Assembly (NCBI GenBank): GCA_033442325.1
Contig: JAWQFM010000018.1
Span: 272,195 to 336,194, forward strand
Origin: Salpingoeca rosetta
Lineage: Eukaryota > Protista > Choanoflagellata
Direction: 5' to 3'
DNA length: 64,000 nt
The position numbers and the translations under genes are program-made. Below, in pieces: positions 3,143 through 61,600 of this stretch (position 1 is its first letter; the number at the start of each line of letters is the position of its first letter). The notes beneath the pieces were generated by a model that ran no database searches, was not told the origin of the DNA, and saw nothing but the letters and a program-made list of their open reading frames with translations.

Positions 3143-3968
3143 CTTTGAGTGTGAGAAGGGAACTTTCTTTTCTTCTGCTAGTTTCACCGTCCACGTTCAC
3201 ACCTGTACTCATCGCCTCACACTTTCCCTACGGTCCTGCTTTCCGCATTTCAGCTGCACTCCATCCGAGCCATCTTCAACAGCGAGCTCATGACAATGGA
3301 CGAGCACAAGATCCTCTGCGATCTCACCACACTCTTCCACACGGTGCGATTTTCATTGTGTCCTCTCTTTGCCCCTTTTGTTGTTATATTCACACACTCT
3401 GCTTGAAAGCCTGTTTCTTTTCTCCTGTTCTTGCACCTTCGTTCTCAATGGCATATCCCGCTCGTATGCCTCGTCCCGCCTCGTGTTTTCCCCTCACCAC
3501 CACCACCACTGCTCACCACCACCACGACGACGACGACCACCACCACCATCATCACCACTACCAGGTCCTTGACCACGCTGCGCTCACCAACACAACCATC
3601 GACGAGATTGCGCTGTCGTTCGGTTCGTTTCCACCACTTTGCTGTTGCTGTTGCTTCCGCTGCTGTTGTTGTCAAGCTGCCGCCGACGTTGTTGTCCAAG
3701 TCGTTGTTGTTCCAGTATGCCGTGAACAACCGACGTCGTGATCAACTCACGTGCTTCGTGTTGCTGGACCACGCTCCACTCCAAACCACCCCTTCTCCCG
3801 TTCTTTGGTTGGCGCACTCCCACACTTGCTCATGTCACGACACCTTCCCCAGGCAAAGCGCTGTTCCCGAACATGGCTGACGAGTGGGCGCACCAGGTGC
3901 TTCACCTGCTCATCAGCCACTCTGAAGAGCTTTTCCCGGACTGCCCTTGCGGCGGCAGCAACGAGTGA
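1192..3968 (+). CDS. PH domain + RhoGAP domain protein (about 9 exons)
   Basis: PH: MEGFLMK|EGGSHKSWKLRWFVLADSELVYFK...EEERKRWVHAI. GAP: EDIFR|VSG with the arginine finger, PYTLSGLIKKILK, HLLISHSEELF. GT-AG junctions keep the frame. Start codon tentative. Confidence 0.8.
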
Positions 3969-4812: not shown

Positions 4813-6129
4813 ACGTACGCGTATGCGGGGGTGTTGTTTGTGGGCGCCTGGCGGGAGAAGAGGGCCGGTGTGAGGCGGCTGAAGGTGGTGGAATTGTCCG
4901 CTTTGGCAGCGGGCTTCTGCTCCAGGTCCTGTTTTGGGGGCGTGATCTCTTCGTCAACGACATCGACGAGCGAATACTCCTGCGGGTTGAACAGCGATTC
5001 CGTGATCTTGTACCTGACAAGTGGCGGTGTGGAATGTGGTGTGATGTGTGGCGTAAGGTGAGCACTTTGCATCCCCACGAGAGGGTGATAGAATCACAGG
5101 GAGATAGACACAGGGGAAGACAGGGGCACACACACGCACGCACACGCACACACGCACGCACACACGTGGGGACAGTAAAGCAAGTGTCCGCACCTCTCAA
5201 TGCCCCAGTTCTTGTTGTATCCTGAAGGGAATTCGTAGTGCGTTGTCGGTATGCTTGCAAGCACCCTTGGGTACACAGCAGTCACAGTGAGTGATGGCGT
5301 GGTGAGTCATGGGCGTGCTGGAGTGCGACTAGAAGCACGGTCGAGTGGCATCAATTGTGAGCGTGCACACATGGCGGCAGCCACGTCAATCAAGAGCGCA
5401 TGTGCGCGTGTGTGTGTGTGTGCTTACTGCTCGTTGTATGCCTGGTCGCTGACGCGGCACACGGACATTTGAAAGTCGCGGATGACCTCCTGTGGTGATG
5501 GGGAGGAAAGAGGCAGGGGAGAACGTTGGTGTTGGTGGGAGACAAGCACGCTGGAATGCAGCCACATGTACACAGACACAGACATAGACACACACACAGA
5601 CACAGGCACAGACAGACACACACAGACGCACTCGAGACAACGCATGTGCTGCAATAATTGAGAGCGCACCCGCTTCATGTATCGCATGTACGAGTCTGTG
5701 ACGTCCGGGAACGACGCCTTTTTCTTCCACCTGGGTAGCTCCTCCTCCTCCACCGCCGTCTAAATGCATGCAGGCAATCGCAGCAGCGATGGTGGCGGTG
5801 GCGGTGGTTAGTGTCGGGGATGGTGTTGTTGCAGTGTGGTGTGGGATGATGAGGGATCTACGTGATACAAGGACAACGTCACCAATACATTGTCTTCACC
5901 TACACATGCGCGCGCATGTACTGGCATGCAGACGTGTAAAATACACTCTCTTTCCTTCAAGTAGAGCGCATCAAGATGAACAAGATTAAGATCAACGTCG
6001 GCCCAGAGGGTGGTACCTTGTCGCCAATCATGGTGCTTGGCACGGGGTCGATGCCAAGGTCCTTGAAGAGCTTCTCAAACTGGTCTGTGATAAAGTTGCC
6101 GGCAAGCTTGCTGCGACGTACACCTGCAG

Positions 6130-45071: not shown

Positions 45072-46900
45072 TTCGTGCAGAGGTGCACTGGGGTGGGCAA
45101 TCGCATGCACCACAGGATCCCATTGTCCCATTATCAGCACCACCACCACCACCACCACCACCACCGCCACCGCCGCAATGCCGCACCAAGCTTGACGTTG
45201 TTTGTTGCCTCGCGCGTCATCTTCTCCAGCATGTCCACAATCGCCTCAAACGTTGGACGCTGCCGCCGGTCGAGCTCCCAGCACATGTGCATGAGCGTGT
45301 GCACGGGGGCGGGGCAGTTTGCCGGCGCATCCATCCGGTAACCTTCCTCCACCTTGCGCACCACCTCAAAGTTGTTCATTGTCCCGTAGGGCTTCTCGCC
45401 AAAGGCCTGAAGAAGCGTTGGGGAGCAGGGAAAGCAGAGGGGAGGGAAGTGCGTTTGTTGGTGAGTTGGTACGTGTGGGTGACAGAACGCGTGGGTGAGA
45501 GAACGCATATGAGGAACGACCACGACGAATAAGCAAACAAGCAAACAAACAAACAAACAAACAAACAAACAAACAAACAAACAAGCAAACAAACATGCGT
45601 GCACGCGGGCCTGCAAGCTTAAAGGGTCGCCTCACCATAATCTCCCACATGACGACGCCAAAGGACCAGACGTCGCTGGATGACGTGTACTTCCTGTGGG
45701 CGCAATGCGGTGATGGCGATCGTAGCAGCGGTGAGGTGGTGTGATGCTGTGAGGAGGGGATGTTGTGGATGGCGCAGACACACACACACACAGACACACA
45801 CAGACACACACAGACATACACAAACAAACAAACAAACAAACAAACAAACAAACAAACAAACAAAACAAGCAAACAAACAAACAAAACAAACAAAACAAAC
45901 GAGTGCACACCTCTGCTGGATGGCCTCTGGGGCGGTCCACTTGATGGGCACCTTGCCGCCTTCCGAGATGAAGTAGTCGGAGCTGTCATCAATCTCTTTG
46001 CTCAGGCCAAAGTCCGCAACCTGCAGCAGGCAGCGCAAAAGGCCAATGAAGATGGTGGTGGTGGTGGTGGTGGTGGTGGTGGTGGTGGTGGTGGTGGTGG
46101 TGGTGGTGGTGGTCAAATCTGATGGCTGCATGTCGAAGGGGTGGACTTGCAGGCAAGGGGCAGAGAGCCAAATACATAGACGCACGCACACACGCGCACT
46201 TGCACGCGCACACACACACACACACGCACTTGCACACACACACACACACATTCATACACACAACACACAACACACACGCACATACATTCATACACACAGA
46301 CACACAACACAGCACGACACGCAGGGCGACCTTGCATGTGAGGTCGTTTGCGACGAGAATGTTGCGGGCGGCGAGGTCGCGGTGCACAAAGCCCTTCTTC
46401 GACAGATAGGACATGCCGAGCGCAACATCAAGCGACATCTGCAGCTGGCGCGTGAGGGGGGTGTCGGTGTGCTTCTGCAGGTAGGAGAGCAGCGAGCCGT
46501 GTGGCATGAGCTCCGTGACAATCATGTTGGGAGTCTTGTCGAGGACAACGCCAAGGAGACCAATGACGTTTGGATGGTTGAACTGGCACATGATGGCGGC
46601 CTCCTTGAGAAACTCAATCTGATCATCGCGCGTTGAGCCCTCGCGCAGCGTCTTCACAGCGCAGTCCACCTGACGCAGAAGGAAAGGGGGGGGGGTTGAG
46701 TGTGTGTGTGCATGAGAGAGAGTGTGTGTGTTGTTGTGTGAGTGTGTGTGAGTGAGTGTGTTGTTGTGTGTGAGTGAGTGTGTGTGTTGTTGTTGTGTGA
46801 GTGAGTGAGTGAGTGAGTGAGTGAGTGAGTGAGTGAGTGAGTGAGTGAGTGAGTGAGTGAGTGAGTGAGTGAGTGAGTGAGTGAGTGAGTGAGTGAGTGA

Positions 46901-46938
<38 letters not shown>

Positions 46939-47419
46939 GGCCAGCAGTCTTTGCGAAAATACATCAACAAACACAACCACACACACACAAATGCACGCAA
47001 TATTTACCTCCTCTGGCTTTGCTGGGTCGAACTTGATGGCTGCGTGGTAGACCTCGCCAAACTCGCCGCTGCCAACACAGGCGATGAGGGTGACGCTGTC
47101 GGAGGGGATGTGACGCGTCTTGCGGCTCACAAGCGACGTCAGCTGCGAAAAGTCCTCATACTTGGACGGGTCCTGTTGAGAGGGGATTGTTAAGTTTTTT
47201 TTTTTTTTTTTTGGGGGGGGGGGAGGCGATGTGAGGATACGGTGGAGTTGAAGGCGTGTGCGATTGAGTGATTGTGTGAAGGAAGAAGATGGCACGTCGA
47301 CTGTGACAGCAGATTGTTTTCCGAGGCATTGCAGTGCAATACACACACCGGTACACACACACAGCGGCACACAGCGGCACACACACACACATACACACAC
47401 ACACATACACACACACACA

Positions 47420-47452
<33 letters not shown>

Positions 47453-48823
47453 GCACGCACACACACACACACACAGACAACACTCGCATAGCTCAACCAA
47501 CGACTGCGGGCGCACCTCGTACATGCCGTCGTCCGCACCAGCGCCGTGGTCAAACTGGTTGTATTGCAGGTTGAGATTCACCCGGTACATGCCGCTCATG
47601 CGCGGCGCCTTCGCCTCAAGTTCGTACAGCGCAGGCGCCGTCTTCCTGTTGCTGCCACCGCCGCTGCGGAGGAAAAAACCCGCGGCAACACCACCCAATA
47701 TGAGCAGCAGCACGCCAAGCGCAATGCCTGCGATGGGCCCCGGCTCCAGGCCACCGGTGCTGCTGCTGCTGCTGCCGCCGTTGGGGTCGGTGGTCGTGCC
47801 TGCGGGTGCTGCCGTGGTCATGGCAGGCGCGCAGTCGCCAGACAGCAGCTTGTAGCCGTCCTCCTCGCACGAGGCAAGGACCGTGTCAGCAGAGGCAAAG
47901 CCTGCGTTGCACGTGCCACTCGCCGCACGGCCAAGGTCGGTTCCAGGCAGCGTGGCATTGAACAGCTCGGCGGTCGGCAGGCACCGCGTGCGCACGACTG
48001 TCACGTTGGCGACGGTCGAGCACGTGCCGCGGTCGAAGAAGACGAGGGACACCTCCGTGACGGAGCGGCGAAGACGCGGTGACATGATGCTGGACTCTAG
48101 GAGGCTCATGCGCGCCAGCGAATTGGTACCGCTGCTCGCCATGTCGCTGAAGAACGTCGCCAAATCGTTGTCCACAACGTACAAGTTGTAGTCGGCCGCC
48201 ATCGGCAGGTTGTTTTCAAGGACCGCCGTGTCCACGACGGCCACCAGCAGCTGGCTGTCGCAGGCACCGTCGGGACACAGGGTGTTGTTCTGTGTAAAGT
48301 CGATGCGGAAGCTTACGTACAGGTCGTCGGGTACGGAGATGGGCGGCGACACGAGCACATTGAACTGCTGTGCGTTGGCGGGCTGAGCCGCGCTGGAGCA
48401 TGTGGCAAAGCCGGAGGGGATCTCGGCCGACCATGCATGCTCGGACACGGTCAGCGGACAGCTTTGCAGCAAGCGAAGACTCGCAGTACTGTCCGCGTTG
48501 TAGCAGAGCCACTCTGTTCGATTCAGCGTAACAGAGTCAAAGTCTGCAGTGTGTGTGTAGTTTTGCGTAGCGGTGAGTGGATGCGGAGCAATCCTTTGCA
48601 TTGAACACAACACCAAGGACGAGTCAGGAAACAACGTGCAAAGAAGTCAAAAACACAGAACAATCGACCCTGCACCAGCACGAGCACCCAAGTAGACACA
48701 CACACACACACACACACCTTTTTGGATCAACTCTTGTGCTGCCGTTGGCTGTGATTGGATGCAAAGTCCCAGGAACAAGGACACCACGGTGACCAGCACG
48801 ACAACGCCACGACACATCATCAT
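43963..48823 (-). CDS. Eph-like receptor tyrosine kinase
   Basis: Signal peptide; Eph LBD/Cys-rich-like ectodomain (LVFFDRGTCSTVANVTVVRTRC); TM PIAGIALGVLLLILGGVAAGFFL; juxtamembrane MYE|DPSKYEDF; GSGEFGEV, EAAIMCQFNHPNVI, HRDLAARN, DFGLS, VPIKWTAPEAI, SDVWSFG; ends ETDI*. Confidence 0.9.
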
Positions 48824-49824: not shown

Positions 49825-49901
<77 letters not shown>

Positions 49902-52900
49902 AGACGTAGCATTTGCCTTGCGTGGTTCGCACACAAGCCCTACCTCCGTGTTGGCTCTCTGCCAAGCCTGCTGTTGATCGCGTGCAACGCACCTCGCTGC
50001 AGTTTGAGCAAGCCCTTGTGGCTGCAGCCAACCTGACGGGCGCGAGTGTCGTGCAAGTCACAGTGCGTGAGGCAGACACCGTCTGTGACTCTGGCACGCC
50101 CACTGGCTTTGATGCGCGCACAGACCCAATCACGCGCAGCACGTGTTCCCAGGAGCGGCGTCGCCGAGCAGGCAACGAGACGTTAACGACAATCGCACCA
50201 TCAAACACAACCATGCCTGCAACCATGGCATCCAACTCAACAACAGCAGTGCCTGCCACGATGGCATCAAACTCAACAACGGTGCCTGCAACCATGCCAT
50301 CCAACATGACAACCACGGCCTCAAACACGACCATGCCATCCAACTCAACAGCAATGCCCGCAACGACAGCTGTCAACGCAACCACCACGACGACGACCAC
50401 CACCACGACGACGACGACGACGACGATGGACCCGTGCACGTGTGCTGAGAACCAGTATGTGGTGGAAGCATGCAACGCAACGCAAAACATCACGAGCGCC
50501 ACGTGCGCTGACTGCAGCACATGTGATGCCGGTCAGTTTGTGGCCACAAACTGCCGTGGCATGACAGACACGCAGTGCGGCAACTGTACAGATGGCACGT
50601 TCCAGAGCATGACTGCACACCTGGAAATGTCGTGCAAGCCGTGCACGGACACGTGCGGGAGCGGCACGTTCCTGGCGAGCGCCTGCACGCGCACCATGGA
50701 CACGCAATGCTCTGCGTGCCCGGACAACACGTTCCAGTCCGCAGACAGCCACAACCTGACCAGCTGCACCACTTGCGACACGTGTACCGCTGGCGAGTTT
50801 GCCTTTCGGTAGTGCACCCCGACATCGAACATTGTGTGCAACAACTGCACAGGCTTTACATACCAGGACCTGCTGATGCACAACAGCTCCACGTGCAAGG
50901 ACTGCAGCATGTGCGGTCAGGGCCAGTTTGTTGCCGACGCCTGCACGGCCACGACAAACACCAACTGCAGCGCGTGCACCGGCGCCACCTTCCAGAACAT
51001 GACAAGCCACTATGAGATGGAGTGCCAGGCTTGCTCAATGTGTGGGCAGGGCACGTTTCTCGCAATGGCCTGCAACCGCACGAGTGATGCCATGTGCTCG
51101 CCGTGCCAGGACGGCACCTACCAGGACAGCAGCAGCCACCTGCAGGAGCAGTGCAAGCAGTGCGGCAGGTGCGACCCTGGCCAGCGTCTGTTGTCGCCGT
51201 GCACCGCCACCAGCAACACGTCCTGCGCTGCGTGTAACAGCGGCACGTGGCAGAACGCGACGGGTCACCTCGACCCAACGTGCATGATGTGCTCCAAGTG
51301 TGGGCTCGGCCAGAAGCTCACCACAAACTGCACGCTGACGGCCAACACCGTCTGCACGACGTGCGAGGATGGCACCTTCCAGGACACCGACGACCACACT
51401 TTCGAATCGTGCACAGCGTGCCGGACGTGCGCCGCTGGCGAGGAGTTTGAGTCCAGCCCCTGCACGGCGTCTGCTGACCGCGCGTGCGACCCCATCACCA
51501 CGTGCGATCCCCGGTACTCGCGCGAGCGGTATGCGCCCACGCCAACCTCGGACCGCGTGTGTCTGGACTTCCGCAAGGCCGCGGTCACCGTCATGGTGCA
51601 GGTGGACACGCTGGAGACGGAGATTGACGCCACGCGCGCCGCCATTGAGGCCGCCATCCAGGACGGCAGCAACGGCCCGCTAGCACGCGAGCTGCGCAAG
51701 TTGGACGATGCAGCGTACAACAACACGGAGGTGACGTACCTGCCGCAGGTGTCACGCTTCGACGTGCCCTCGGAGGGCCGGCAATTTGTCTACCTTGATC
51801 TCCAGTTTGCAGCATCATCAACACAATTCGACATCCAGGTCAGAATGACGCCTGTGCGCACGTGTGTGCGTGTGTGCGCGTGTGTGTGTGCGTGTGTGTG
51901 TGGGTGCGCGCGCGTACGCATGTGTGCCTGTGACGTTGTGTGGAGGGGTTTGTGGTGGTGCATGCGTGTGCGTTGTGTGTAGGCGTTTACGGTTGTGCAT
52001 GCGTGTGTATGTGTGTCTGCACGTACACATGCCATCTCGTGCATGTTTCGTTTCGCACCACCGCCCCTTTCCTTTTCTCTGCTGGAACCACACATCCATC
52101 AGCCAACCCCTCCCCCTCCCAACATCATCCCAATGTCGCCATCCCCCTCACACCTTCGTCCCTGCACCCCTGTTCCCTCTCCCCAACGCCACCTGTTTTA
52201 GAAACTCGACCTTCTGGACGTGCTTGGTGCCTTCTTGTTGAACGCGACGGAGGATGCAGACGCAACCGCCACATTTATGGAGCGCAGCACAGTGACCACC
52301 ACAACCACCAACACAACGACAAACGCAACCACGACAACACACTCCACCACGGCGCTGTTCCGTGTGGACGTCGATGCAGCCTTGACCATCACCACAGATG
52401 CCCTGAACGCCATGGCTGCCGCCATTGATGCCGCCAACACCACCTCATTGCAGCGCACCGCTGGCCCCACCGCAAACGGCGAGCCCGTCATGTTCATCCC
52501 CTGCGAGCCCTGTCGGTCCACGACCCACCCGGGGGCTGTACCAGGAGCTCGGCTTCTGCGGCGGCCTGTGTCTGCAGTGCACGGAGTGCTCGCTCGACCA
52601 GTATTTGACGAACGTGTGCGAGGGCACGAGCGACGCGCAGTGCAACGCGCTTCCAACCGAGTTTGAGACAGCGCCCCCTGTGAACGTGGTTGGCGTGAAC
52701 ACCAACCACATTCTCCCAGCCGCCGCGTCGCAACAGCAGGACCAGGCCATGGACGCGTCCATGCGCGTGAACCGCTCGTTTGTGTTCACCAACATCGCCC
52801 CAGGCGAGAGCACGTGGGTCGCTGTCAGTGGCGAGCCCGAGGATGGTGCGCAGATGGTGACCCGACCCCTCGCCCCGGCAGCGCAGGTTGACTGCGCGCC

Positions 52901-55900
52901 CGTCCTCGACAACGTGTATTCGACATACCCGACTGCACAAGTGGTGCTTGCCGCGCTGGACGCCAGCGGGCATTCGCGTGTTGCGCGCAAACGTCACCGT
53001 GCGTTTTGTCGCCGCAGACGACGAGGACGCCGAGGTGACGGCCACCTGCACCATGCCCACAGACGGGCCTGCAGTGTGCAACGCGCGGACCACGTTTGCA
53101 GACGCGTGGTTCTCGTCCGCAGGCCCACGCCTCGTGGACGTCACGTACAAGTACACGACGCCACGCGCAGACGGCGAGGGCTACGAGACCAGCCCCGACA
53201 TGGCGTGCGGACAGCTGACGCTCGGCCCAGCGCAGCAGGAGGTGCTGGGTGTGAGCAGCAACATTGCCGCCGTCGTGACCCCCACCAACAGCGTGTACGA
53301 GAACGACACCGTGGACGTGGCGGTGATTGCCCGCCACGACTGGGCCGTGCACTCGTTTGGCGTCTCGCTCCGCTGCGGCAACTGCCGCATTGAGATGAGC
53401 GAGGCCAACACAGCCGCCTGGAGTATCAGCAGCACCGTCACCACGGACGAAGAGTCGGGCGAGCAAATGCTCGTTGTTGCCGGCATTGCTCGCGACCTCA
53501 CCGACGAGCCAAGGTTTTCTGAGCAGCGGTCCTTTAGCCTGTTCACCGCCACCGTGCACGCTGTGCCTGCTGCAGAGGACAGCATGCTTGTGCTGCGCGG
53601 CAACATTGACTCGTTCCTCCAGGTGCGCAACCGCAGGCCCATTGTTGACACGCGCACGCGCGATGTGAAGCTGCCTGTGCTCGCCAACGACGGCTCCGGG
53701 GTCGACGCCACGTCCTGGACGCAGCCCATCCTGGCCATTGAGCCCGTGCGCGCCCATGTGTTTGTGGGCGGCGGCCTCGGCGTTGTCTTTGACACGGCCT
53801 CCATCACCGACGCCACCACCGACCTCCCCGTGTCGCTCGTTGGCGTGTGGCCGCGCGGCGACGCGCTGCGCAACGTTGCTAATCCCGAAACAGACCTCGT
53901 TGACTGCCAACTTGTCGACATGTCCGCCGTTCTGGATGCTGTATCGTGCAGCGCCGTGTCCTTGGCCCCCTTCACGCCTCAAGACATGCCAACCACGGAC
54001 CCTGTGGAGCTGCAGTTGAGCGTGGGTGGCATGGCGGCCTTTGGAACCGCCAACATTATGCTCATGCGACCCGCCAGCAAGCTCACCATCGCGCCGCCTG
54101 GCGACATCAGCAGCGACACCACCGTGGTGCTGCGTCCCATCCGGGAGGTCAACGCCACCAGCAACGCGTGTGCTGATGTGCAGTTCATGTCCTCGTGGCT
54201 GCAGGTGTCGGCGTCCTTCCCCAATGGCGTGACGCTTGATGTCACCGGCATCGCTGCAATGACCACAAGCAACTCGAATGTGGCCACCATCGACACAGCA
54301 ACCAGCGTCGTGTCTGGCGTTGGCGCTGGGTCTGCCTCTTTTGTGTGCACCAACAACCATGACTGCGCAGACACCACCATCTCCGTGATGAGCGATGTCC
54401 CTGCTGTGGCGCTCGGCGTGCGTGCGTACGCCGTTGGCGGCGCCACTTTTACCGCCACGATCAACGACGCAGGCAACCTGTGGGTCTCGGCTGCGGTCAG
54501 CGTGTCGAGCAGCAACCTTCTCCGCTTCACCAGCAGCGCCAACGCGGCGCGCCTTCACGTGGCCGCCGTCGTCATGGAGCAGGTCACGGACAACAGGCAG
54601 CAGCTGGCGCTCGCGCCAGCTGCAGTCGCCTTTGCCAGCGACAACACGGACGTGGCAACTGTGGCGCAGAGCAACGATGACCCGGCAACCGTCACCACCA
54701 CGGCAACCTCGGGCCTTGCTGCCATCACCGCCCAGTGGCCGAAGGCCACATGTGCAAGGAAGACGTTTGAGGCCGCCGTGAATGTGACCACGACAGATGC
54801 CACTGTCGTGTCCATCGCCGTGTCGCCGACAAGCGTTGACTTGGTCGTGCCCTTTGCCAACGCAGGCGCAGCCGAGGCTGTGACAGGGCTGCCGTCATCG
54901 GCCGCCTTCACCGTCACCCGCACCCTCAGCGACGGCAGTGTTGAGACCGTGACGTCTGCCAGTTTCACGTCTGCCGATGAGAACTGTGGTGACTTCACAG
55001 GTATGCTAGCGCTGGAGACAGATGCCGTTGCCAGCGAGTGCACGTACACCACGGTTGACGGCGACCTCATGGCCTCTGTCACCGTGAACAAGTACGCGCT
55101 CGATGCTGTGCGCATGACGGTGACGGCCCGTGGTGTTGAGGGCTCGGCCACACACACGTCTGGCGCTGCCGCTGCAGAGCAGTTTGAGGTCCCGCCAATT
55201 GGCGCCGGTGCCACAGCCTGGCCAGCGCTCACTGCCAGCTGCGTTGCCGTGTTCAACACGACCAAACAGGACATGGCAGTGACGGTACAGCTGCGACAGG
55301 TTGCCACAATGGCGCAGGCCGTGTTTGCCTCCAGCTTCACCGCTGCCAACGACGACCAGCAAGATCAGGAGGACGCTGCGCTAGCCCTGCAGCCAGCTGA
55401 CGCCAGCCTGCAGATCACCACAAGCATTGCCGGCAACGCCACGCTCTCCGCAACCTTTGGCGGTCTCACGGCCACCACCGCCGTCCTGTTTGCTGCGGGA
55501 GACGATGCATCGCTCCCTCTGAGCGTGACGGGCGCCAGCGTGGCTGATGTTGTGGCCAATGCAAACGGCACGTTCCCTCTCCTTGGCCGGGTGAATGCCA
55601 CGTTTACGCTCGACATTGCTGCCGAGGTGACCGGCGAGCCACTGTCGCCAGGGCAGGTGCGTCTTGATGACGGCTCTCTCGCCATCCGATCCCTCGTCAC
55701 CTTCACGTCCAGCAACACGGATGCCCTGAGCGTGGACGCACACGGCATCATCACCCTGCACGATGGCAGCGCGACAGAGGTGACCATCGGCATCGCCGTG
55801 AACGGCACCGTGCAGGCCACTGTCACCTGCCTTCCGTCCCTCCTGCCCGCAGAGGGTGCTGGCAGCTTTGGGCCGCACGGCGTCTCTGCCGCGTCCTTCT

Positions 55901-58627
55901 CGCGCGTGCGTGTTCCTCTTCACGTTGAGGCGGAGAACCTGCGTGCAGCCGTGCTCAGCCTGACGTACGACCCGGCCCTCCTTACGCTGGCCACGGTGGA
56001 GCTTGGCTCGGACGTGCAGTTTGCGTTCCTCGACTTCAACGTGCGTACGCCTGGTGAACTGAGCGTGTTTGTCGTCATCCCCGGCAATGCCATCACCAGC
56101 GACGACCTTGAGCTCGGCGTGGCCGTGTTTACCACCCGCAACCTCACCACCACCAGCCCGCAGCTCTCGCTCGGCGGCTCCGTGGTTGAGGTGGACGCCA
56201 ACGGCAACCCGAGCCTGGTTGAGCTTGATGCCACCACGTCCTCGCTGTCTGTGGAGACCACCCCGATGATGATGACACGTCGCCGCCGCAGCAGCCTGAC
56301 AAGCGACGGTGCTGCCGACCTTGAGCTTGACGCTGCAGCCATGGTTGCTAACACGCTTGCCCGCCGTCGTCGCAGCGGCCCCCGCGGCACCCTCACGACG
56401 GTGCTCGCCAACCACCCGACCTTTGACATGAACGGCGATGGCGTGTTGGACGTGCTGGATGTGCTGATGCTGTCCGATGTGTACAGCGGCCGGCTGACCG
56501 AGAACGACCTTGCAGAGGGCGCAGACGCGGACACCAACAGCGACGGCATCGTTTCCTTTGACGACGTGTCCTTCCTGCTGTCTTTGGCGGCGGGTCGCCT
56601 GGTTGCGCTGCGGCGTGTGGCCGTCACACCCGTGCAGGCCGCAGACTCCGATTGCATGCTGTCCTTCAACGTGAGCGTGCTGCTGACCAACATCACCCTG
56701 TCCACCCCCAAAGGCGACGACACGCGCCTGTATCTCGACGTGGCTGGAGTCGCCTCCAGCAGTGACTTTGATGCTACCTTTGCTGCGGCCTCCACTGCCC
56801 CTGGTCCGAACTTCAAGTTTGTGCGCATCCCGTATGCCCGCACCAACAGGACGGAGGACACGGGCGCATACTTCCTGCAGGCGTCAACACCGCTTGCCTC
56901 CAGCGACCAGCTTGGCGTGAGCGTGCTGCAGGTTGATGGCAGCGGCGCGTACAACTTCCACACGCGCCAGGACATGATTGTCAACAACACGCTTGATGCC
57001 TCCTTCGACGTCGACGGCACCAACGTCTCCCTCTTCCTGCCGTTTGGCTATGCACCAATTCGTGCGTTCACCAACACGATGGACACGCCCACCTGTCTTG
57101 CGCAGCGCCGGCCCGTCATCACCGACTTCACCCGCCCTGACCCGGATGCCATGAACGTCGTTGACGGCTACCTCTTGCTGCTGGACTGGACGGCGCCACC
57201 CACGCCGCCCAACGCCATCACGCGCTACTTTGTGCAGTACCGCGACCTCAACGTCACAGGCGCGCCCGTGATTGAGAAGAGCGTGGATGGCAACACGCTG
57301 CACCTTGACCTCACGGACCAGATCCTGCCGTATCACACATACGAGGTGCAGGTGCAGGCCGAGTTTGGCAACCGTCGCAGTGTCATCTCCACACCCGCAA
57401 CCGCGCAAACGCATCAGGTGTGTGTGTGTCGCGTGTACTGGTGTGTGGTTGTGTGTGTGTGTGTACTTGTGTGTGTGTGTACTTGTGTGTGTGTGTGTGC
57501 TATGTGTGCTGTTGTGTGTGTTGTGTGTGTTGTGCGTGCAATAGACGCATTGCTTGTGTTGTGGCCACTCGTCCTGCTGTTGCTTACACCCTTGTGATGA
57601 ATCGCTCAATTCTCCATTTATCTGAACTCCTCCCCCCTCCTCCTCCTTTGCTTTGCACCTGGCGTGTGCCCTTCGTTTGACTTTGCCCTGTACTCACGCG
57701 ATGTTGTGGCCAACACCTTTAGGACACGCCCAACATGCCACCGCAACTTGACGCCGTCGCCGTGATCAACGCCACTGCGGTGAATGTCACGTGGACGCCC
57801 CTTGATGAGACTGACCTCAACGGCGTTGTGCAGTATCTCGTGCTCGTGCAGCGGCTGGATGATGAGCCAAACGCCGACCCGAACGCGCCCAGCCAATTTG
57901 TGCGCACGGTCAACCACCCTGTATCATCAACTATGTTTACCGGCCTCGAGGAGAGCGTGAAGTACAACGTGACCCTCCAGGCGCGCACCAACGTGGACAC
58001 TGGCTTTGCCATCTCTGCCACAGAGTTTTACCTCCCTGCGATTGTGTTTGAGACGGGTGATGTACCACCTGACCCACCAGAGTTGGTGTCCATCGTCCCT
58101 TCAGACACGTCGTTCACCATCACCTGGGAGGCGCCTCCTCCCGAGACGCACAACTCAGACCTCGTTGCATACCTCGTGCGTGTGCGTCGTGCCGCTAGCA
58201 CCACGTATGCCGACAACACAACCATCACGGACGCTGACTTTGGTGGCGCTGACGACTGGCACGTGTTCCGATACAGTGCACAGACGTTCACCAAGGAGTT
58301 CACCACCCTCGATTTCGTGAATCTGCTTCATCCCGCCATTGTGTACGAGTTCCAGACGCAGACGGAAGGCACCTCTAGCTTGTTCAGCCCATGGTCCGAG
58401 ACTTACACCGTTCGCCTGCTCGAATCAGGTTTGTGTGATGTGTGCGTGTGAAATGTGTGTGCGAGTTGAACTTAGGCGACATGGTGTGCACTACATGCAT
58501 ACGTCGCTTACCTCGCGCTTTCGTCGCTGTTGCTGTTCCTCGAGTCGTTCGTGACTGCTGGTGAACTTCCCAGTCACAGGCACAAGCACACGCATATGCA
58601 AGTTGTACTGTCATACTCTCACTCTCA

Positions 58628-58673
<46 letters not shown>

Positions 58674-61600
58674 ACACGCAGCACCCACGGGCAACGTGAC
58701 CAACACGGACGTGACGACGACGTCGTCATCGCTGATGGTGGAGTGGCAGCTGCCGGAACCGCTGGAGCGGAAGGGGCTCATCACCAACTTCACCATTGTG
58801 TACTCGCGCCAGGACGACGACCCACGCGTTGCCACAGACTCGCTGGACAACTGCCCTGCGTCCGTGTGCAACTCGTTTGTGCCCGCAAACGGCGACGTGG
58901 TGTACACGTGGCCGCTGGTTGGCCTGGAGGCGTACGTCACATACACGGTTGAGGTCCGCGCGTGGACGTCTGCTGGCATTGGGCCCGCAGCCACGTTCGT
59001 CATCCGCACCGACGAGGCCATTCCGTCCGCCCCTGTTGTCTTTGGCGACGTGAGCGTCACGCCGCGTACAGTCGACATTGACTTTGACCCGCTCCCGGTT
59101 CCCGACCGCAACGGCATTGCTGCCTACACGGCCACGCTCACCATCTCCACAGACCCGTTCTACACGCAGAGGATCGACTCGGCGCTCGCTGCAAGCCTGC
59201 CCGTTGTGACGGAGTTTGAGAACCAGCCCAACAGCACCCTCACCTTCCAGGCCACTGGCCTGCAGCCATTCATGGAGTACACGCTGGAGGTTGTGCCGCA
59301 CACGAGCGTGGGCGACGGTGAGGCCAACACCATCACTGTGCTGACGGAGGAGGAAACGCCCACGGCACCAGCCATTACCAATGTGCAGGTGCTGGCAGAT
59401 GACACTGCACAGGAGAAGCGCGTGCGCGTGAGCGTGAACATCCGTCCACTCAACCGCCGCAACGGCGTGCTGCAGAACCTGACAATTGAGTACGGCAACG
59501 ACGCGTTTGGCGACCTGGCCACGCTGCAGACGCCGCTCACGTCGGCGGAGCGCGCCACCACCACTGTCTCGCGCGTCATTGATGGTCTGCGCGCCGGTGT
59601 GCTGTACAGCTTCACGGCGACGGTCGCCAACCGCGCGCCCGTGTCGCCCGAGTCGCCCACATCGCCCTCTTTCTCCAAGACCACAGATGAGTACATTCCA
59701 ACCGGCCCTGTGCTCAACCTGGTGGCTGCGGAGGAGACGGACGAAACAGACGCCTCCAAGCGCGTGCTGCTGACGTGGAACCCACCCACCCTTGCAACGC
59801 GCAACGGTATCATCACAGAGTACCGCGTTGTCGTGCGGGTGACGCCGAACCAGCAGGCGCAGGCGCAGGTGCACAGCGACCTCACGTATTCGCTGGCGGA
59901 ACTGGGCAGCAACAACCAGGGTGACGGCCTCAGTACGCGCTTCACTTCGCTGGGCGCATATGACAAGTACACGTTCTCGGTAACGCCGCTGACAGCCATT
60001 GGCGAGGGCACTGACACAACGACCGTGTCTACGCCAGACAACAACGGCATTCTGTCGCCGGCGCTGCCGGGCGCCAGTGTGGGCCAGCTGACCACCACCA
60101 AGGGCACGACCACGCTGGACGTGTCGTGGAACGCGCTCGCCGTGTCTGACTGGAACGACGCCAGCCTGCAGTACCGCGTGATTCTGACGCAACTTGCTGA
60201 TGACCACTCGGACACGCCCGCGGAGCACGTGGTGGCGACGCAGGAGACGTCCACCACAAGTGTCAGCTTCTCCGGGCTGCAGGAGTACGTGCAGTACAAG
60301 GTGGACGTGTACCCCATCAACTCTGTGTTTGTTGGCATGGAGCAGGCTGGTGGGTTTGACGCCAGTGCGCTGTTGACGACAAACACCGTGCGCACGGAGG
60401 CGGCACCGCCAGCCGCCACGCCCGTGATCACAGACCGCTCCAACGACGCGCACAGCATCACGGTGCAGTGGGGCCGCATTGCCATGCACGACTTCAACGG
60501 CCCGCCGCGCCACTACGTGGTCAGCTACAAGGGGCTTGCGGTGGATTACGTCGAGAACGGCGGGCAGAGCGCCACGTCTCCGGAACTGGACGCCACGGAC
60601 GTGATTGTGCCCTACGACGCCAGCGAGGAGAACCCCTCTGTGACGCTGACGGACCTGGAGCCAAACCGCATGTACGAGATCAAGGTGGCGCCCGAGAACA
60701 CCGAGTTTGCGCCGGGCCCCTTTAGCGCGACGGAGTCTGTGCAGACGTGGTCGTTTCGCCCGGCGGAGCTGCCGACGGTGCAGTTCCACGACGACCGGCC
60801 CAACGGCGAGAGCAAGCAGACAACGCTGCGCATCACGTGGCCCATCATCAACACGCGCTTTGGGCCCGTGCGCCAGGTGCAGGTCATCGTGGAGCCGGAG
60901 GACAGCCGCCACTTCAACACCATGTACAACTGCACGTCGGCCAGTGGCGAGGACGAGTGTGCCTTTGGCGGATGGGAGACGAGCGAGAACGCGCGGGTAA
61001 ACAAGCAGACGCCGCGCGCGTACATCGCCGTCCAGCGGCTGTACACCGGTGACGACGCGACGCAGACGAGTGGCTCGCTGGTGGTGGGCGACGAGCTCAA
61101 CTACGGCGGCTTCTTTAACGGCCCGCTGCGCGCTGGCACCACGTACACCGTGCGCCTGCGCGCCTTCACGCAGTCTGGCGACGGAACCGAGATGTTTGAC
61201 ACGGTTGGCACAATCTCAGAACCCGTGTACGACGAGAAGGGCCGCCTGATCTCGTCCCCACAGGCGTCCACGACCACATCCTCCTCGTCTGGGGGGAGCC
61301 CCGTTGGCATCATCGCTGGTGGCGCATCTGCTACGGCTCTGGTCCTCATTGTACGTTTGCACAACGCGGTTTTGTTTGCCTGCTGACCATCTGTATATGG
61401 CCTGACGGCAGCCTGTCGTCCTTGTGAGATGCTGTGCTGCGTTGCTTCAGACTACCCGTTCACATCGTCGTTGTGTGCACACTGGCTGGTGCGATTACGG
61501 CGTGTGCCAGGTGCTTGTTGTCGTGATCCTACAGGCGTGTCGATCTGGAACAACGAAGACGGCAAGACTGCCAGCGCCCGTGAGTTTATGTGTCCGTTTG

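What the first reader, a model, noticed from the sequence alone, without database searches (positions are those of the whole stretch)
55900..56600. Cohesin - furin sites - dockerin in one eukaryotic receptor: a possible cleave-and-redock ectodomain
Seen: a cohesin-like domain (RVRVPLHVE...LSLTYDPALL), two RRRRS sites (56278, 56362), then a two-loop dockerin-like pair (DMNGDGVLDVLD; DTNSDGIVSFDD). Known: cohesin-dockerin is the Ca2+-dependent, very strong cellulosome coupling, and RxRR is a furin consensus. Inference: cleavage splits the protein, and the distal cohesin-ended part stays bound to the dockerin on the membrane FN3 stalk. That would give a Ca2+- or force-releasable, possibly exchangeable surface module. 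Cohesins are already known in some choanoflagellate proteins; the mechanism proposed here is my hypothesis.
Basis: partly seen in the sequence, partly recalled or inferred. Interest (0 to 1): 0.85.

Follow-up and report, generated by a model that had tools for sequence, protein, structure and literature searches.

The report
Convertase-cut cohesin-dockerin joint in choanoflagellate receptors
A choanoflagellate surface receptor carries a bacterial-type cohesin and dockerin separated by a floppy linker with two strictly conserved furin-type cutting sites, a cassette repeated over 20 times in this genome, which suggests that these giant proteins are cut and then held together by a calcium-dependent snap joint.

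Summary
Window 55900-56600 encodes a true cohesin fold (AF2 with Foldseek and VIA: Z 14.9 to 2vo8, top 15 hits all cohesins). It also encodes two RRRR-S sites at 56278 and 56362 in a disordered linker, and a two-loop dockerin.

The window copy falls just below both Pfam cut-offs. A profile built only from the eukaryotic copies still retrieves solved cohesins (E 3e-5) and dockerins (E 2e-6), and paralogous copies pass Pfam.

This genome holds at least 21 copies of the same roughly 430-aa cassette: cohesin, RRRR, variable linker, RxRR, dockerin, beta domain. The hosts are cadherins, TNFR/EGF giants and a receptor tyrosine phosphatase. Copies also occur in Barroeca, Codosiga and marine metagenomes.

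In 18 aligned cassettes, R-x-R-R at site 2 is invariant and RRRR at site 1 is at least 90% conserved, at about 22% overall identity. All 43 R-x-[KR]-R motifs lie in the linkers and none lies elsewhere in the cassettes. A kexin/furin-type convertase gene is present.

The two predicted fragments dock canonically (ipSAE 0.72 against 0.01 for controls). Every detectable cohesin and dockerin in the genome is paired in cis.

Cleavage and binding are inferred, not shown.

The parts
49913..51860 (+). N-terminal ectodomain exons with about 8 TNFR/NGFR cysteine-rich repeats
   Evidence: Pfam TNFR_c6, E 1e-16 and 7e-40.
52888..57408 (+). Long ectodomain exon (1,507 codons) that holds the cassette. Upstream part is made of Ig/BIG-like repeats, with a weak TMEM132-type cohesin-like stretch at about 53282-53667.
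   Evidence: ORF. Aligns with the Barroeca orthologue P0070 residues 391-1848. Weak cohesin-profile hit at iE 0.006.
55900..56277 (+). Cohesin module (cassette residues 20-145), a nine-strand beta sandwich
   Evidence: AF2 pLDDT 84-91. VIA Z 14.9 to 2vo8_A, with the top 15 hits all cohesins. Foldseek prob 1.00. Profile against PDB cohesins, E 3e-5.
56278..56289 (+). Convertase site 1, RRRR followed by Ser; cleavage predicted after 56289
   Evidence: Read directly. At least 90% conserved in 18 cassettes. Present in the Barroeca orthologue.
56290..56361 (+). Variable, disordered 24-residue linker, predicted to be excised
   Evidence: pLDDT below 50 over residues 138-186. No sequence or length conservation among cassettes; the whole cohesin-to-dockerin gap measures 38-85 aa.
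56362..56373 (+). Convertase site 2, RRRR followed by Ser (R-x-R-R consensus); cleavage predicted after 56373
   Evidence: R174, R176 and R177 are invariant in all 18 aligned cassettes.
56410..56598 (+). Dockerin module with two Ca2+-binding loops (56425-56460 and 56530-56565), each followed by a helix
   Evidence: Profile against solved dockerins, E 2e-6. phmmer to 2y3n_B, E 1.5e-4. Invariant D195, D206, D230 and D241. AF2 pLDDT 84-93 with helices 204-215 and 239-249.
56605..57108 (+). Conserved post-dockerin beta-rich domain with an invariant Cys; the last part of the cassette. No Pfam family.
   Evidence: Aligned in all full cassettes. AF2 strands at residues 255-411, with moderate pLDDT. 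No usable Atlas hit.
57175..61302 (+). Fibronectin type III stalk in three exons (57175-57396, 57735-58430, 58696-61302), ending in a membrane-proximal domain of the receptor-PTP type
   Evidence: Pfam fn3 (E 5e-6, 1e-13, 2e-37), PTP_tm and Fn3_PTPRU.
61303..61353 (+). Predicted transmembrane segment. Similarity to the phosphatase-bearing orthologue and paralogue ends here.
   Evidence: Hydrophobic run at the end of ORF 58696-61386. The tblastn match to P0070 stops at residue 2695, window 61353.

Best explanation
The region is one copy of a conserved choanoflagellate ectodomain cassette with this order: cohesin, RRRR, disordered variable linker, R-x-R-R, dockerin, beta domain.

The most likely mechanism has three steps.
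1. The cohesin and dockerin of one cassette fold and dock on each other in cis in the secretory pathway.
2. A kexin/furin-type proprotein convertase cuts at both polybasic sites and removes the linker.
3. The distal part (TNFR repeats, Ig-like repeats and cohesin) stays attached to the membrane-bound part (dockerin, beta domain, FN3 stalk and TM) only through the Ca2+-dependent cohesin-dockerin contact.

The covalent chain thus becomes a non-covalent, mechanically strong joint. Loss of Ca2+ or high force could release it and shed the distal ectodomain. Proteins with three cassettes would become chains of four pieces.

Shown here:
- the two folds;
- the positions and conservation of the sites;
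- the disorder of the linker;
- the presence of a convertase gene;
- strict cis pairing in the genome.

Inferred:
- cleavage itself;
- binding and its Ca2+ dependence;
- retention or release of the distal part.
For: Folds:
- Cohesin: VIA Z 14.9, Foldseek prob 1.00.
- Dockerin: profile against PDB dockerins at E 2e-6, with four invariant Ca-loop Asp residues.
- Paralogous cassettes pass the Pfam cut-offs: Cohesin 26-45 bits and Dockerin_1 28.8 bits.

Sites:
- R-x-R-R at site 2 is invariant in 18/18 cassettes and RRRR at site 1 is at least 90% conserved, while overall identity to the window copy is mostly 18-24%.
- 43 motif starts lie in linkers, 0 in the rest of the cassettes and 2 in 15.7 kaa of flanks.
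- The sites are kept in Barroeca, in a TARA marine scaffold and in JGI/ENA proteins. In Codosiga they are weakened to RRR and RR.
- The linker is disordered (pLDDT below 50) and hypervariable in sequence and length.

Enzyme: a Peptidase_S8 plus P_proprotein gene is present in the genome.

Docking:
- Complex prediction gave a score of 0.72 against a best control of 0.01. That mark was reached by 51 of 78 solved complexes and 2 of 108 mismatched pairs. The runs agree in at least 98% of contacts, and the partner pLDDT is at least 76.
- The interface uses both dockerin helices and one cohesin sheet face.
- The single-chain AF2 model has pTM 0.74 despite a 50-residue disordered linker.
- Predicted interface positions are identical in three orthologues at 18/37 positions, against 35/142 at other folded positions (p 0.005). 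Among paralogues the same positions are more variable.

Cis pairing: all 16 Cohesin hits and all 4 Dockerin_1 hits in the genome lie in cassettes.

Precedent: animal LAR-type receptor phosphatases are cut at a penta-arginine by furin-like enzymes and stay non-covalently bound (PMC8711739). The Barroeca orthologue and the C4 paralogue of this gene are receptor phosphatases.
Against: - There is no protein-level evidence of cleavage or binding.
- The complex score can come from the model's memory of solved cohesin-dockerin complexes. It shows likeness, not that this pair binds.
- The window copy is below both Pfam thresholds.
- Two cassettes have only one site or one arginine run (L029, L031), and the Codosiga copy has only RRR and RR, so double cutting is not universal.
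- The interface statistics rest on a predicted interface and only three orthologues.
Confidence: 0.5

Rival explanations
1. Cut and swap. The convertase frees the cohesin and dockerin ends, which then pair in trans with other cassettes or other proteins. This would build an exchangeable surface or matrix network, a eukaryotic analogue of cellulosome assembly.
For: - At least 21 cassettes have divergent predicted interface residues: entropy 2.37 against 2.00 bits at other positions.
- Each supermodule also has a second, weak, unpaired cohesin-like domain of the TMEM132 type.
- Removing the linker is what a swap would need.
Against: - No free dockerin or free standard cohesin was found. All Pfam hits lie in cis pairs.
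- The single-chain model is confident about the domain arrangement (pTM 0.74).
- Interface divergence among paralogues fits private cis pairs equally well.
Confidence: 0.15
2. Cut to shed. The sites serve to release the distal ectodomain as a soluble fragment. The dockerin-like unit is only a Ca2+-stabilised structural element that does not hold the cohesin.
For: - The sites are conserved and accessible.
- Shedding of the extracellular subunit is known for LAR-type phosphatases (PMC8711739).
Against: - It does not explain why a cohesin and a dockerin always flank the sites.
- It does not explain why the predicted interface is conserved among orthologues.
- It does not explain the high docking score.
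Confidence: 0.15
3. Not cut. The cassette is a static three-domain structural unit, and the arginine runs have another role, such as binding sulfated glycans or acting as a charged spacer.
For: No cleavage data exist. Arginine runs can bind polyanions.
Against: - The conserved pattern is specifically R-x-R-R, followed by Ser, Ala, Asp, Asn, Glu or Arg, which is the convertase consensus.
- It sits in a disordered linker.
- It occurs twice per cassette around a non-conserved spacer.
- It is absent from 22,000 other ectodomain residues.
- A convertase gene is present.
Confidence: 0.12

Closest known systems
Bacterial and archaeal cohesin-dockerin pairs (cellulosome type I and non-cellulosomal, e.g. 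Clostridium perfringens GH33/GH84 cohesins and Archaeoglobus fulgidus 2xdh)
   Same: - Same cohesin fold: Z 13-15.
- Same duplicated Ca2+-loop-plus-helix dockerin.
- Predicted canonical interface: two dockerin helices on one cohesin sheet.
- Some bacterial proteins also carry both modules in one chain (P0009, P0015, P0036).
   Different: - Eukaryotic host proteins, in the ectodomains of adhesion and signalling receptors.
- Fixed order, cohesin then dockerin, with two convertase sites between them and a conserved extra beta domain after them.
- No free partners in the genome.
- Most copies carry a Cys-rich clasp before the dockerin.
Furin-processed, non-covalently held animal receptors, above all the LAR-type receptor tyrosine phosphatases (E and P subunits, penta-arginine site)
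   Same: - A poly-arginine site in the ectodomain of a receptor with an FN3 stalk.
- The orthologue (Barroeca P0070) and the C4 paralogue carry tandem phosphatase domains.
- The two-subunit logic is the same (PMC8711739).
   Different: - The site is not membrane-proximal but lies upstream of the whole FN3 stalk.
- There are two sites around an excisable linker.
- The holding contact would be a dedicated cohesin-dockerin pair, which animals are not known to use.
- The window copy itself has lost the phosphatase part.
TMEM132 / coherin-lefftyrin-hedgling architecture (cohesin plus Ig/BIG domains in holozoan adhesion proteins; PMC6030884)
   Same: - Cohesin domains in choanoflagellate cadherins are known.
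- Paralogous cassettes here sit in cadherins and lie downstream of Ig_TMEM132 domains.
   Different: - That work reports no dockerin in vertebrates, and says nothing about a dockerin partner or convertase sites in the choanoflagellate proteins.
- The cohesin here is a second one in each supermodule, paired with a dockerin.

Membership tests
Cohesin domain (Pfam PF00963) | Nine-stranded flattened beta-sandwich (jelly-roll) fold of about 140 residues | tested here: met
   AF2 pLDDT 84-91. VIA Z 14.9, rmsd 2.7 A over 129 residues to 2vo8_A, with the top 15 hits all cohesins. Foldseek prob 1.00.
Cohesin domain (Pfam PF00963) | Score over the curated Pfam threshold | tested here: not met
   The window copy scores 17.5 bits against a cut-off of 24.1. 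Homologous cassettes of the same genome score 24-51 bits. The eukaryote-only profile hits solved cohesins at E 3e-5. Membership therefore holds by transitive homology.
Cohesin domain (Pfam PF00963) | Binds a dockerin | tested here: inconclusive
   Prediction only: ipSAE 0.72 against a best control of 0.01. The score may reflect memory of solved complexes.
Dockerin type I (Pfam PF00404) | Two 12-residue Ca2+-binding loops (D-x-[ND]-x-D-G-...-D), each followed by a helix | tested here: met
   Both loops are intact at 56425-56460 and 56530-56565. Asp at loop positions 1 and 12 is invariant in 18 cassettes. Helices 204-215 and 239-249 are modelled at pLDDT 84-93.
Dockerin type I (Pfam PF00404) | Score over the curated Pfam threshold, and closer to dockerins than to EF-hands | tested here: inconclusive
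   The window copy scores 20.8 bits against a cut-off of 22.9. The single sequence hits troponin C almost as well as a dockerin. The family profile separates them: dockerins at E 2e-6 to 1e-3, troponin at E 0.03 or worse. In the six-frame Pfam scan of the genome, four cassette dockerins reach the cut-off (33.6, 33.6, 23.2 and 22.9 bits).
Dockerin type I (Pfam PF00404) | Ca2+-dependent folding and binding | not testable with these tools
   Needs ITC or SPR with and without EDTA.
Proprotein convertase (furin/kexin) substrates | R-x-[K/R]-R motif in an exposed, flexible segment of a secretory-pathway protein | tested here: met
   RRRR occurs twice, in a linker with pLDDT below 50. The segment lies between TNFR and FN3 ectodomain modules, upstream of a TM segment.
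Proprotein convertase (furin/kexin) substrates | Conservation of the motif beyond that of its surroundings | tested here: met
   Site 2 is invariant and site 1 is at least 90% conserved in 18 cassettes. Counts are 43 in linkers, 0 in the rest of the cassettes and 2 in flanks. The sites are also kept in other species.
Proprotein convertase (furin/kexin) substrates | A convertase in the same organism | tested here: met
   P_proprotein domain at four places in the genome. L011 combines Peptidase_S8 with P_proprotein.
Proprotein convertase (furin/kexin) substrates | Cleavage observed | not testable with these tools
   Needs a Western blot or N-terminomics.
Receptor-type protein tyrosine phosphatases processed into E and P subunits (LAR type) | FN3 ectodomain, TM and tandem phosphatase domains | tested here: not met
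   The window copy has the FN3 stalk and TM, but no phosphatase similarity in the remaining window or in 10 kb downstream. The C4 paralogue and Barroeca P0070 have both phosphatase domains.

The most novel reading that the evidence does not exclude
Choanoflagellates have a private cohesin-dockerin code. The 20 or more cassettes would be orthogonal, Ca2+- and force-sensitive snap joints, created by convertase cutting. Through them, giant cadherins, receptor phosphatases and adhesion GPCRs could be taken apart, shed or re-assembled in trans. This would be a eukaryotic counterpart of cellulosome assembly, and a possible ancestor of the two-subunit design of animal receptors and of the TMEM132 architecture.
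Probability: 0.2. Interest if true: 0.9.

Novelty: new variant of a known kind. Interest (0 to 1): 0.72.

Why it matters
Many animal adhesion and signalling receptors (Notch, LAR-type phosphatases, large cadherins, adhesion GPCRs) work as cut but non-covalently held two-part proteins. How this design arose is unclear. Here the closest relatives of animals show a repeated, strongly conserved cassette in the same protein classes: cadherins, a receptor phosphatase and an adhesion GPCR. In it, the holding contact would be a bacterial-type cohesin-dockerin pair, one of the mechanically strongest protein contacts known.

If this holds, it would give three things:
- a concrete, testable mechanism for mechanical or Ca2+-gated shedding in a unicellular relative of animals;
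- a functional dockerin partner for the so far orphan eukaryotic cohesins;
- a set of possibly orthogonal eukaryotic cohesin-dockerin pairs for protein engineering.

Salpingoeca-type choanoflagellates can be edited genetically, so the sites can be mutated directly.

Tried and rejected
- AF2 of the cassette with a 5-sequence alignment was too poor to use (pLDDT 44.6). It was repeated with 18 sequences.
- hhalign of alignment A2 against P0027 is circular, because P0027 is a row of A2. It is not used as evidence.
There is therefore no read-level RNA evidence. The look-up of sequencing runs only shows that runs guessed to be RNA, from six studies, hold 68-98% of the words.
- Disclosure: one later local blastn still used the whole window as subject, including those places. 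From then on they were masked, and they were sent to no external search.
- The search for homologous proteins with the 18-cassette alignment found nothing in the 232-738 aa length band. This says nothing about longer proteins.
- Papers PMC3035643 (Peer 2009) and PMC3420208 (Nichols 2012) are not held. Whether they mention dockerins in choanoflagellates could not be checked.
- The Atlas feature search of the post-dockerin domain gave no usable hit.
- Rejected: that the dockerin is an ordinary EF-hand pair. The family profile prefers dockerins by three to four orders of magnitude in E-value.
- Rejected: that the linker is an unrecognised intron. It is in frame and free of stops in every cassette, and it is present in a Codosiga transcriptome ORF.
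- Rejected: that the arginine runs are compositional chance.


Full report
**1. What is in the window**

The window is G000:C18:272195-336194 of a 55.4-Mb, 68-contig genome. Three things point to a choanoflagellate: introns rich in GT/CA microsatellites, the genome size, and a nearest orthologue in Barroeca monosierra.

A large + strand gene runs from about 49913 to at least 61386. In order, it encodes:
- about eight TNFR cysteine-rich repeats;
- a 1,507-codon exon (52888-57408) of Ig-like repeats;
- the region in question;
- an FN3 stalk in three exons, with a membrane-proximal domain of the receptor-phosphatase type;
- a hydrophobic segment at 61303-61353.

**2.

The following are all there in one frame:
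- the cohesin-like stretch from 55903;
- RRRR-S at 56278-56292 and at 56362-56376;
- the two dockerin loops at 56425-56460 and 56530-56565.

On its own the window copy misses both Pfam cut-offs: Cohesin 17.5 against 24.1 bits, Dockerin_1 20.8 against 22.9 bits. Four independent lines settle the homology.

- phmmer against 1.84 billion representatives found bacterial proteins for each half. These carry strong Pfam Cohesin or Dockerin_1 domains.
- Profiles built only from five eukaryotic copies retrieve solved cohesins (2vn5_A and 1g1k_A, E 3e-5). They also retrieve solved dockerins (5m2o_B at E 2e-6, then 2y3n_B, 2ccl_B and 1ohz_B), well ahead of troponin C at E 0.03 or worse.
- With an 18-sequence alignment, AF2 gives mean pLDDT 71.9 and pTM 0.74. 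The cohesin scores 84-91, the dockerin 84-93, and the linker (residues 138-186) below 50. Foldseek places cohesin modules on top at prob 1.00. The Foldseek-independent VIA search gives Z 14.9, 2.7 A over 129 residues, to 2vo8_A. Its first 15 rows are all cohesins, followed by pilin-type Ig folds at Z 11 or less.
- Paralogous copies pass Pfam: Cohesin at 24-51 bits, and one cassette passes both Cohesin and Dockerin_1.

**3. It is a cassette, not a one-off**

A profile of the roughly 430-residue unit (cohesin, linker, dockerin and a following beta-rich domain) finds 24 matches in this genome, on nine contigs. They lie inside open frames of 850 to 7,568 codons. One more copy, on C2, came from the Pfam dockerin scan.

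Hosts in this genome:
- cadherins;
- TNFR/EGF-rich giants, one with three cassettes in a single 6,844-codon frame;
- the present receptor.

Related proteins elsewhere:
- a 3,489-aa Barroeca monosierra protein with FN3 repeats and two tyrosine phosphatase domains, which is the orthologue of this gene;
- a Codosiga hollandica secretin-family 7TM receptor;
- a TARA Oceans scaffold;
- several JGI and ENA proteins whose precomputed Pfam lists hold both Cohesin and Dockerin_1.

**4. The polybasic sites are the best conserved feature of the cassette**

In the 18-cassette alignment, identity to the window copy is 18-24% for the paralogues and 41% for the Barroeca orthologue. Only these columns are invariant:
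- R174, R176 and R177 (R-x-R-R, site 2);
- four Ca-loop aspartates;
- one Gly;
- one Cys.

R146-R149 (site 1) are at least 90% conserved. The segment between the sites has no conserved residue. The whole cohesin-to-dockerin gap measures 38-85 residues.

Counting R-x-[KR]-R in 17 non-redundant cassettes gives:

| Region | Motif starts | Residues |
|---|---|---|
| Linkers | 43 | 1,091 |
| Rest of the cassettes | 0 | 6,389 |
| Flanking ectodomain | 2 | 15,742 |

The expectation from composition is 1.2e-4 per position.

- Fifteen of the 17 non-redundant cassettes (17 of the 19 listed) have two separate sites.
- One has a single run of eight arginines.
- One has a single RTRR.
- In other species the pattern is kept (Barroeca RRRRR and RVRR; TARA RRR and RARR; JGI/ENA proteins mostly both). 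In Codosiga it is weakened to RRR and RR.

The genome encodes P-domain convertases at four places. One open frame combines Peptidase_S8 with the P domain.

**5. Do the two halves bind?**

Complex prediction was run with the cohesin piece (149 aa, ending at site 1), the dockerin piece (85 aa, starting after site 2) and two Ca2+.
- The score was 0.72 against a best control of 0.01.
- That mark was reached by 51 of 78 solved complexes and 2 of 108 mismatched pairs.
- The runs agree in at least 98% of contacts, and the partner pLDDT is at least 76.
- The contacts use the helices after both Ca loops and one sheet face of the cohesin, which is the canonical geometry.

Because many cohesin-dockerin complexes are solved, this shows likeness, not binding.

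Two further observations fit a working, cognate contact.
- The predicted interface positions are identical in the three orthologues at 18 of 37 positions, against 35 of 142 other folded positions (one-sided Fisher p 0.005). Among paralogues they are more variable than the rest: 2.37 against 2.00 bits.
- All 16 Pfam Cohesin hits and all 4 Dockerin_1 hits in the genome lie inside cassettes. No free partner is detectable.

**6. Mechanism**

The best reading has three steps.
1. The pair docks in cis.
2. A convertase cuts at one or both sites and the linker is lost.
3. The chain is then held only by the Ca2+-dependent contact.

This parallels animal LAR-type receptor phosphatases. They are cut at a penta-arginine by furin-like enzymes in the trans-Golgi and remain as non-covalently bound E and P subunits (PMC8711739). 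The parallel is close, since the orthologue and a paralogue of this gene are receptor phosphatases. Cleavage, binding, Ca2+ dependence and release are all inferred.

The rivals are trans swapping, plain shedding and no cleavage. They are weighed in the Rival explanations section. Strict cis pairing argues against swapping. The constant flanking by a cohesin and a dockerin argues against plain shedding. The specific, position-fixed consensus in a disordered linker argues against no cleavage.

**7. What is known**

Cohesin domains in choanoflagellate and sponge cadherins and in TMEM132 are published. That paper states that dockerin homologues are not detectable in vertebrates (PMC6030884).

Full-text searches found no paper that links dockerin with choanoflagellates other than that one. 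None describes convertase sites between the two modules. Two older key papers are not held, so prior mention of the dockerin cannot be excluded. Database Pfam tables already list both domains on some of these proteins.

The new parts are the fixed cassette, its copy number and spread, and the invariant double convertase site. I therefore rate it a new variant of known kinds: cohesin-dockerin pairs, and convertase-processed two-part receptors.

**8. Limits**

- There are no protein data.
- Those places were masked from then on. One local blastn had still included them, and no external search received them.
- No non-cognate docking control could be run.
- Only three orthologues were available for the interface test.

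Noticed in passing
window 49826-61272, compared with G000:C4:198130-210399 (- strand; loci L006, L009, L037): The whole gene has a copy on contig C4 that is about 97% identical in DNA. The C4 copy continues through the TM into two tyrosine phosphatase domains (59% identity to Barroeca P0070 residues 2065-3353). The window copy loses all similarity after 61353 and shows no phosphatase in the remaining window or in the next 10 kb. The window gene is therefore a recent duplicate without the phosphatase part, possibly a decoy.
   Followed up: partly
loci L016, L021-L023, L025, L026, L028-L031, L039 (between site 2 and the dockerin): Most cassettes have a short Cys-rich motif (C-x2-PPC-x2-C type) right after site 2, and a Cys in place of Gly at position 6 of dockerin loop 1. 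This suggests a disulfide clasp at the new N-terminus. The window gene and its orthologues lack it.
   Followed up: no
window about 53282-53667; C7 frame residues 1592-1726, 3363-3494, 4848-4966: A second, very weak cohesin-like stretch lies about 830 residues upstream of each cassette (iE 0.006-0.27). In paralogues it comes with Ig_TMEM132 domains. Each supermodule may hold an unpaired cohesin of the TMEM132 type.
   Followed up: partly
P0069 (Codosiga hollandica, EukProt EP00042): A secretin-family 7TM (adhesion-GPCR-like) protein carries Ig_TMEM132 domains and one cassette in its N-terminal ectodomain. In that position animal adhesion GPCRs carry the autoproteolytic GAIN domain.
   Followed up: no
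L039:2028-3989 (G000:C2:1185527-1187488): One more cassette was missed by the cassette-profile scan. It has RRRRR-S and KRARR-N sites, in a 653-codon frame whose C-terminal part is Cys-rich.
   Followed up: partly
window 56605-57108: The conserved post-dockerin domain has about 165 residues, an invariant Cys and a conserved G-Y-x-P near its end. It has no Pfam family and no usable Atlas match. Its fold was modelled only with moderate confidence.
   Followed up: partly
window about 45100-48634, - strand: A receptor tyrosine kinase gene lies head to head with this gene. Its kinase exons carry an HRDLAARN-type motif, and it has a Cys-containing ectodomain exon with a TM (ORFs).
   Followed up: no
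window 57433-57490: The GT-microsatellite intron after the long exon tripped the reads tool's filter, so nothing was laid.
   Followed up: no
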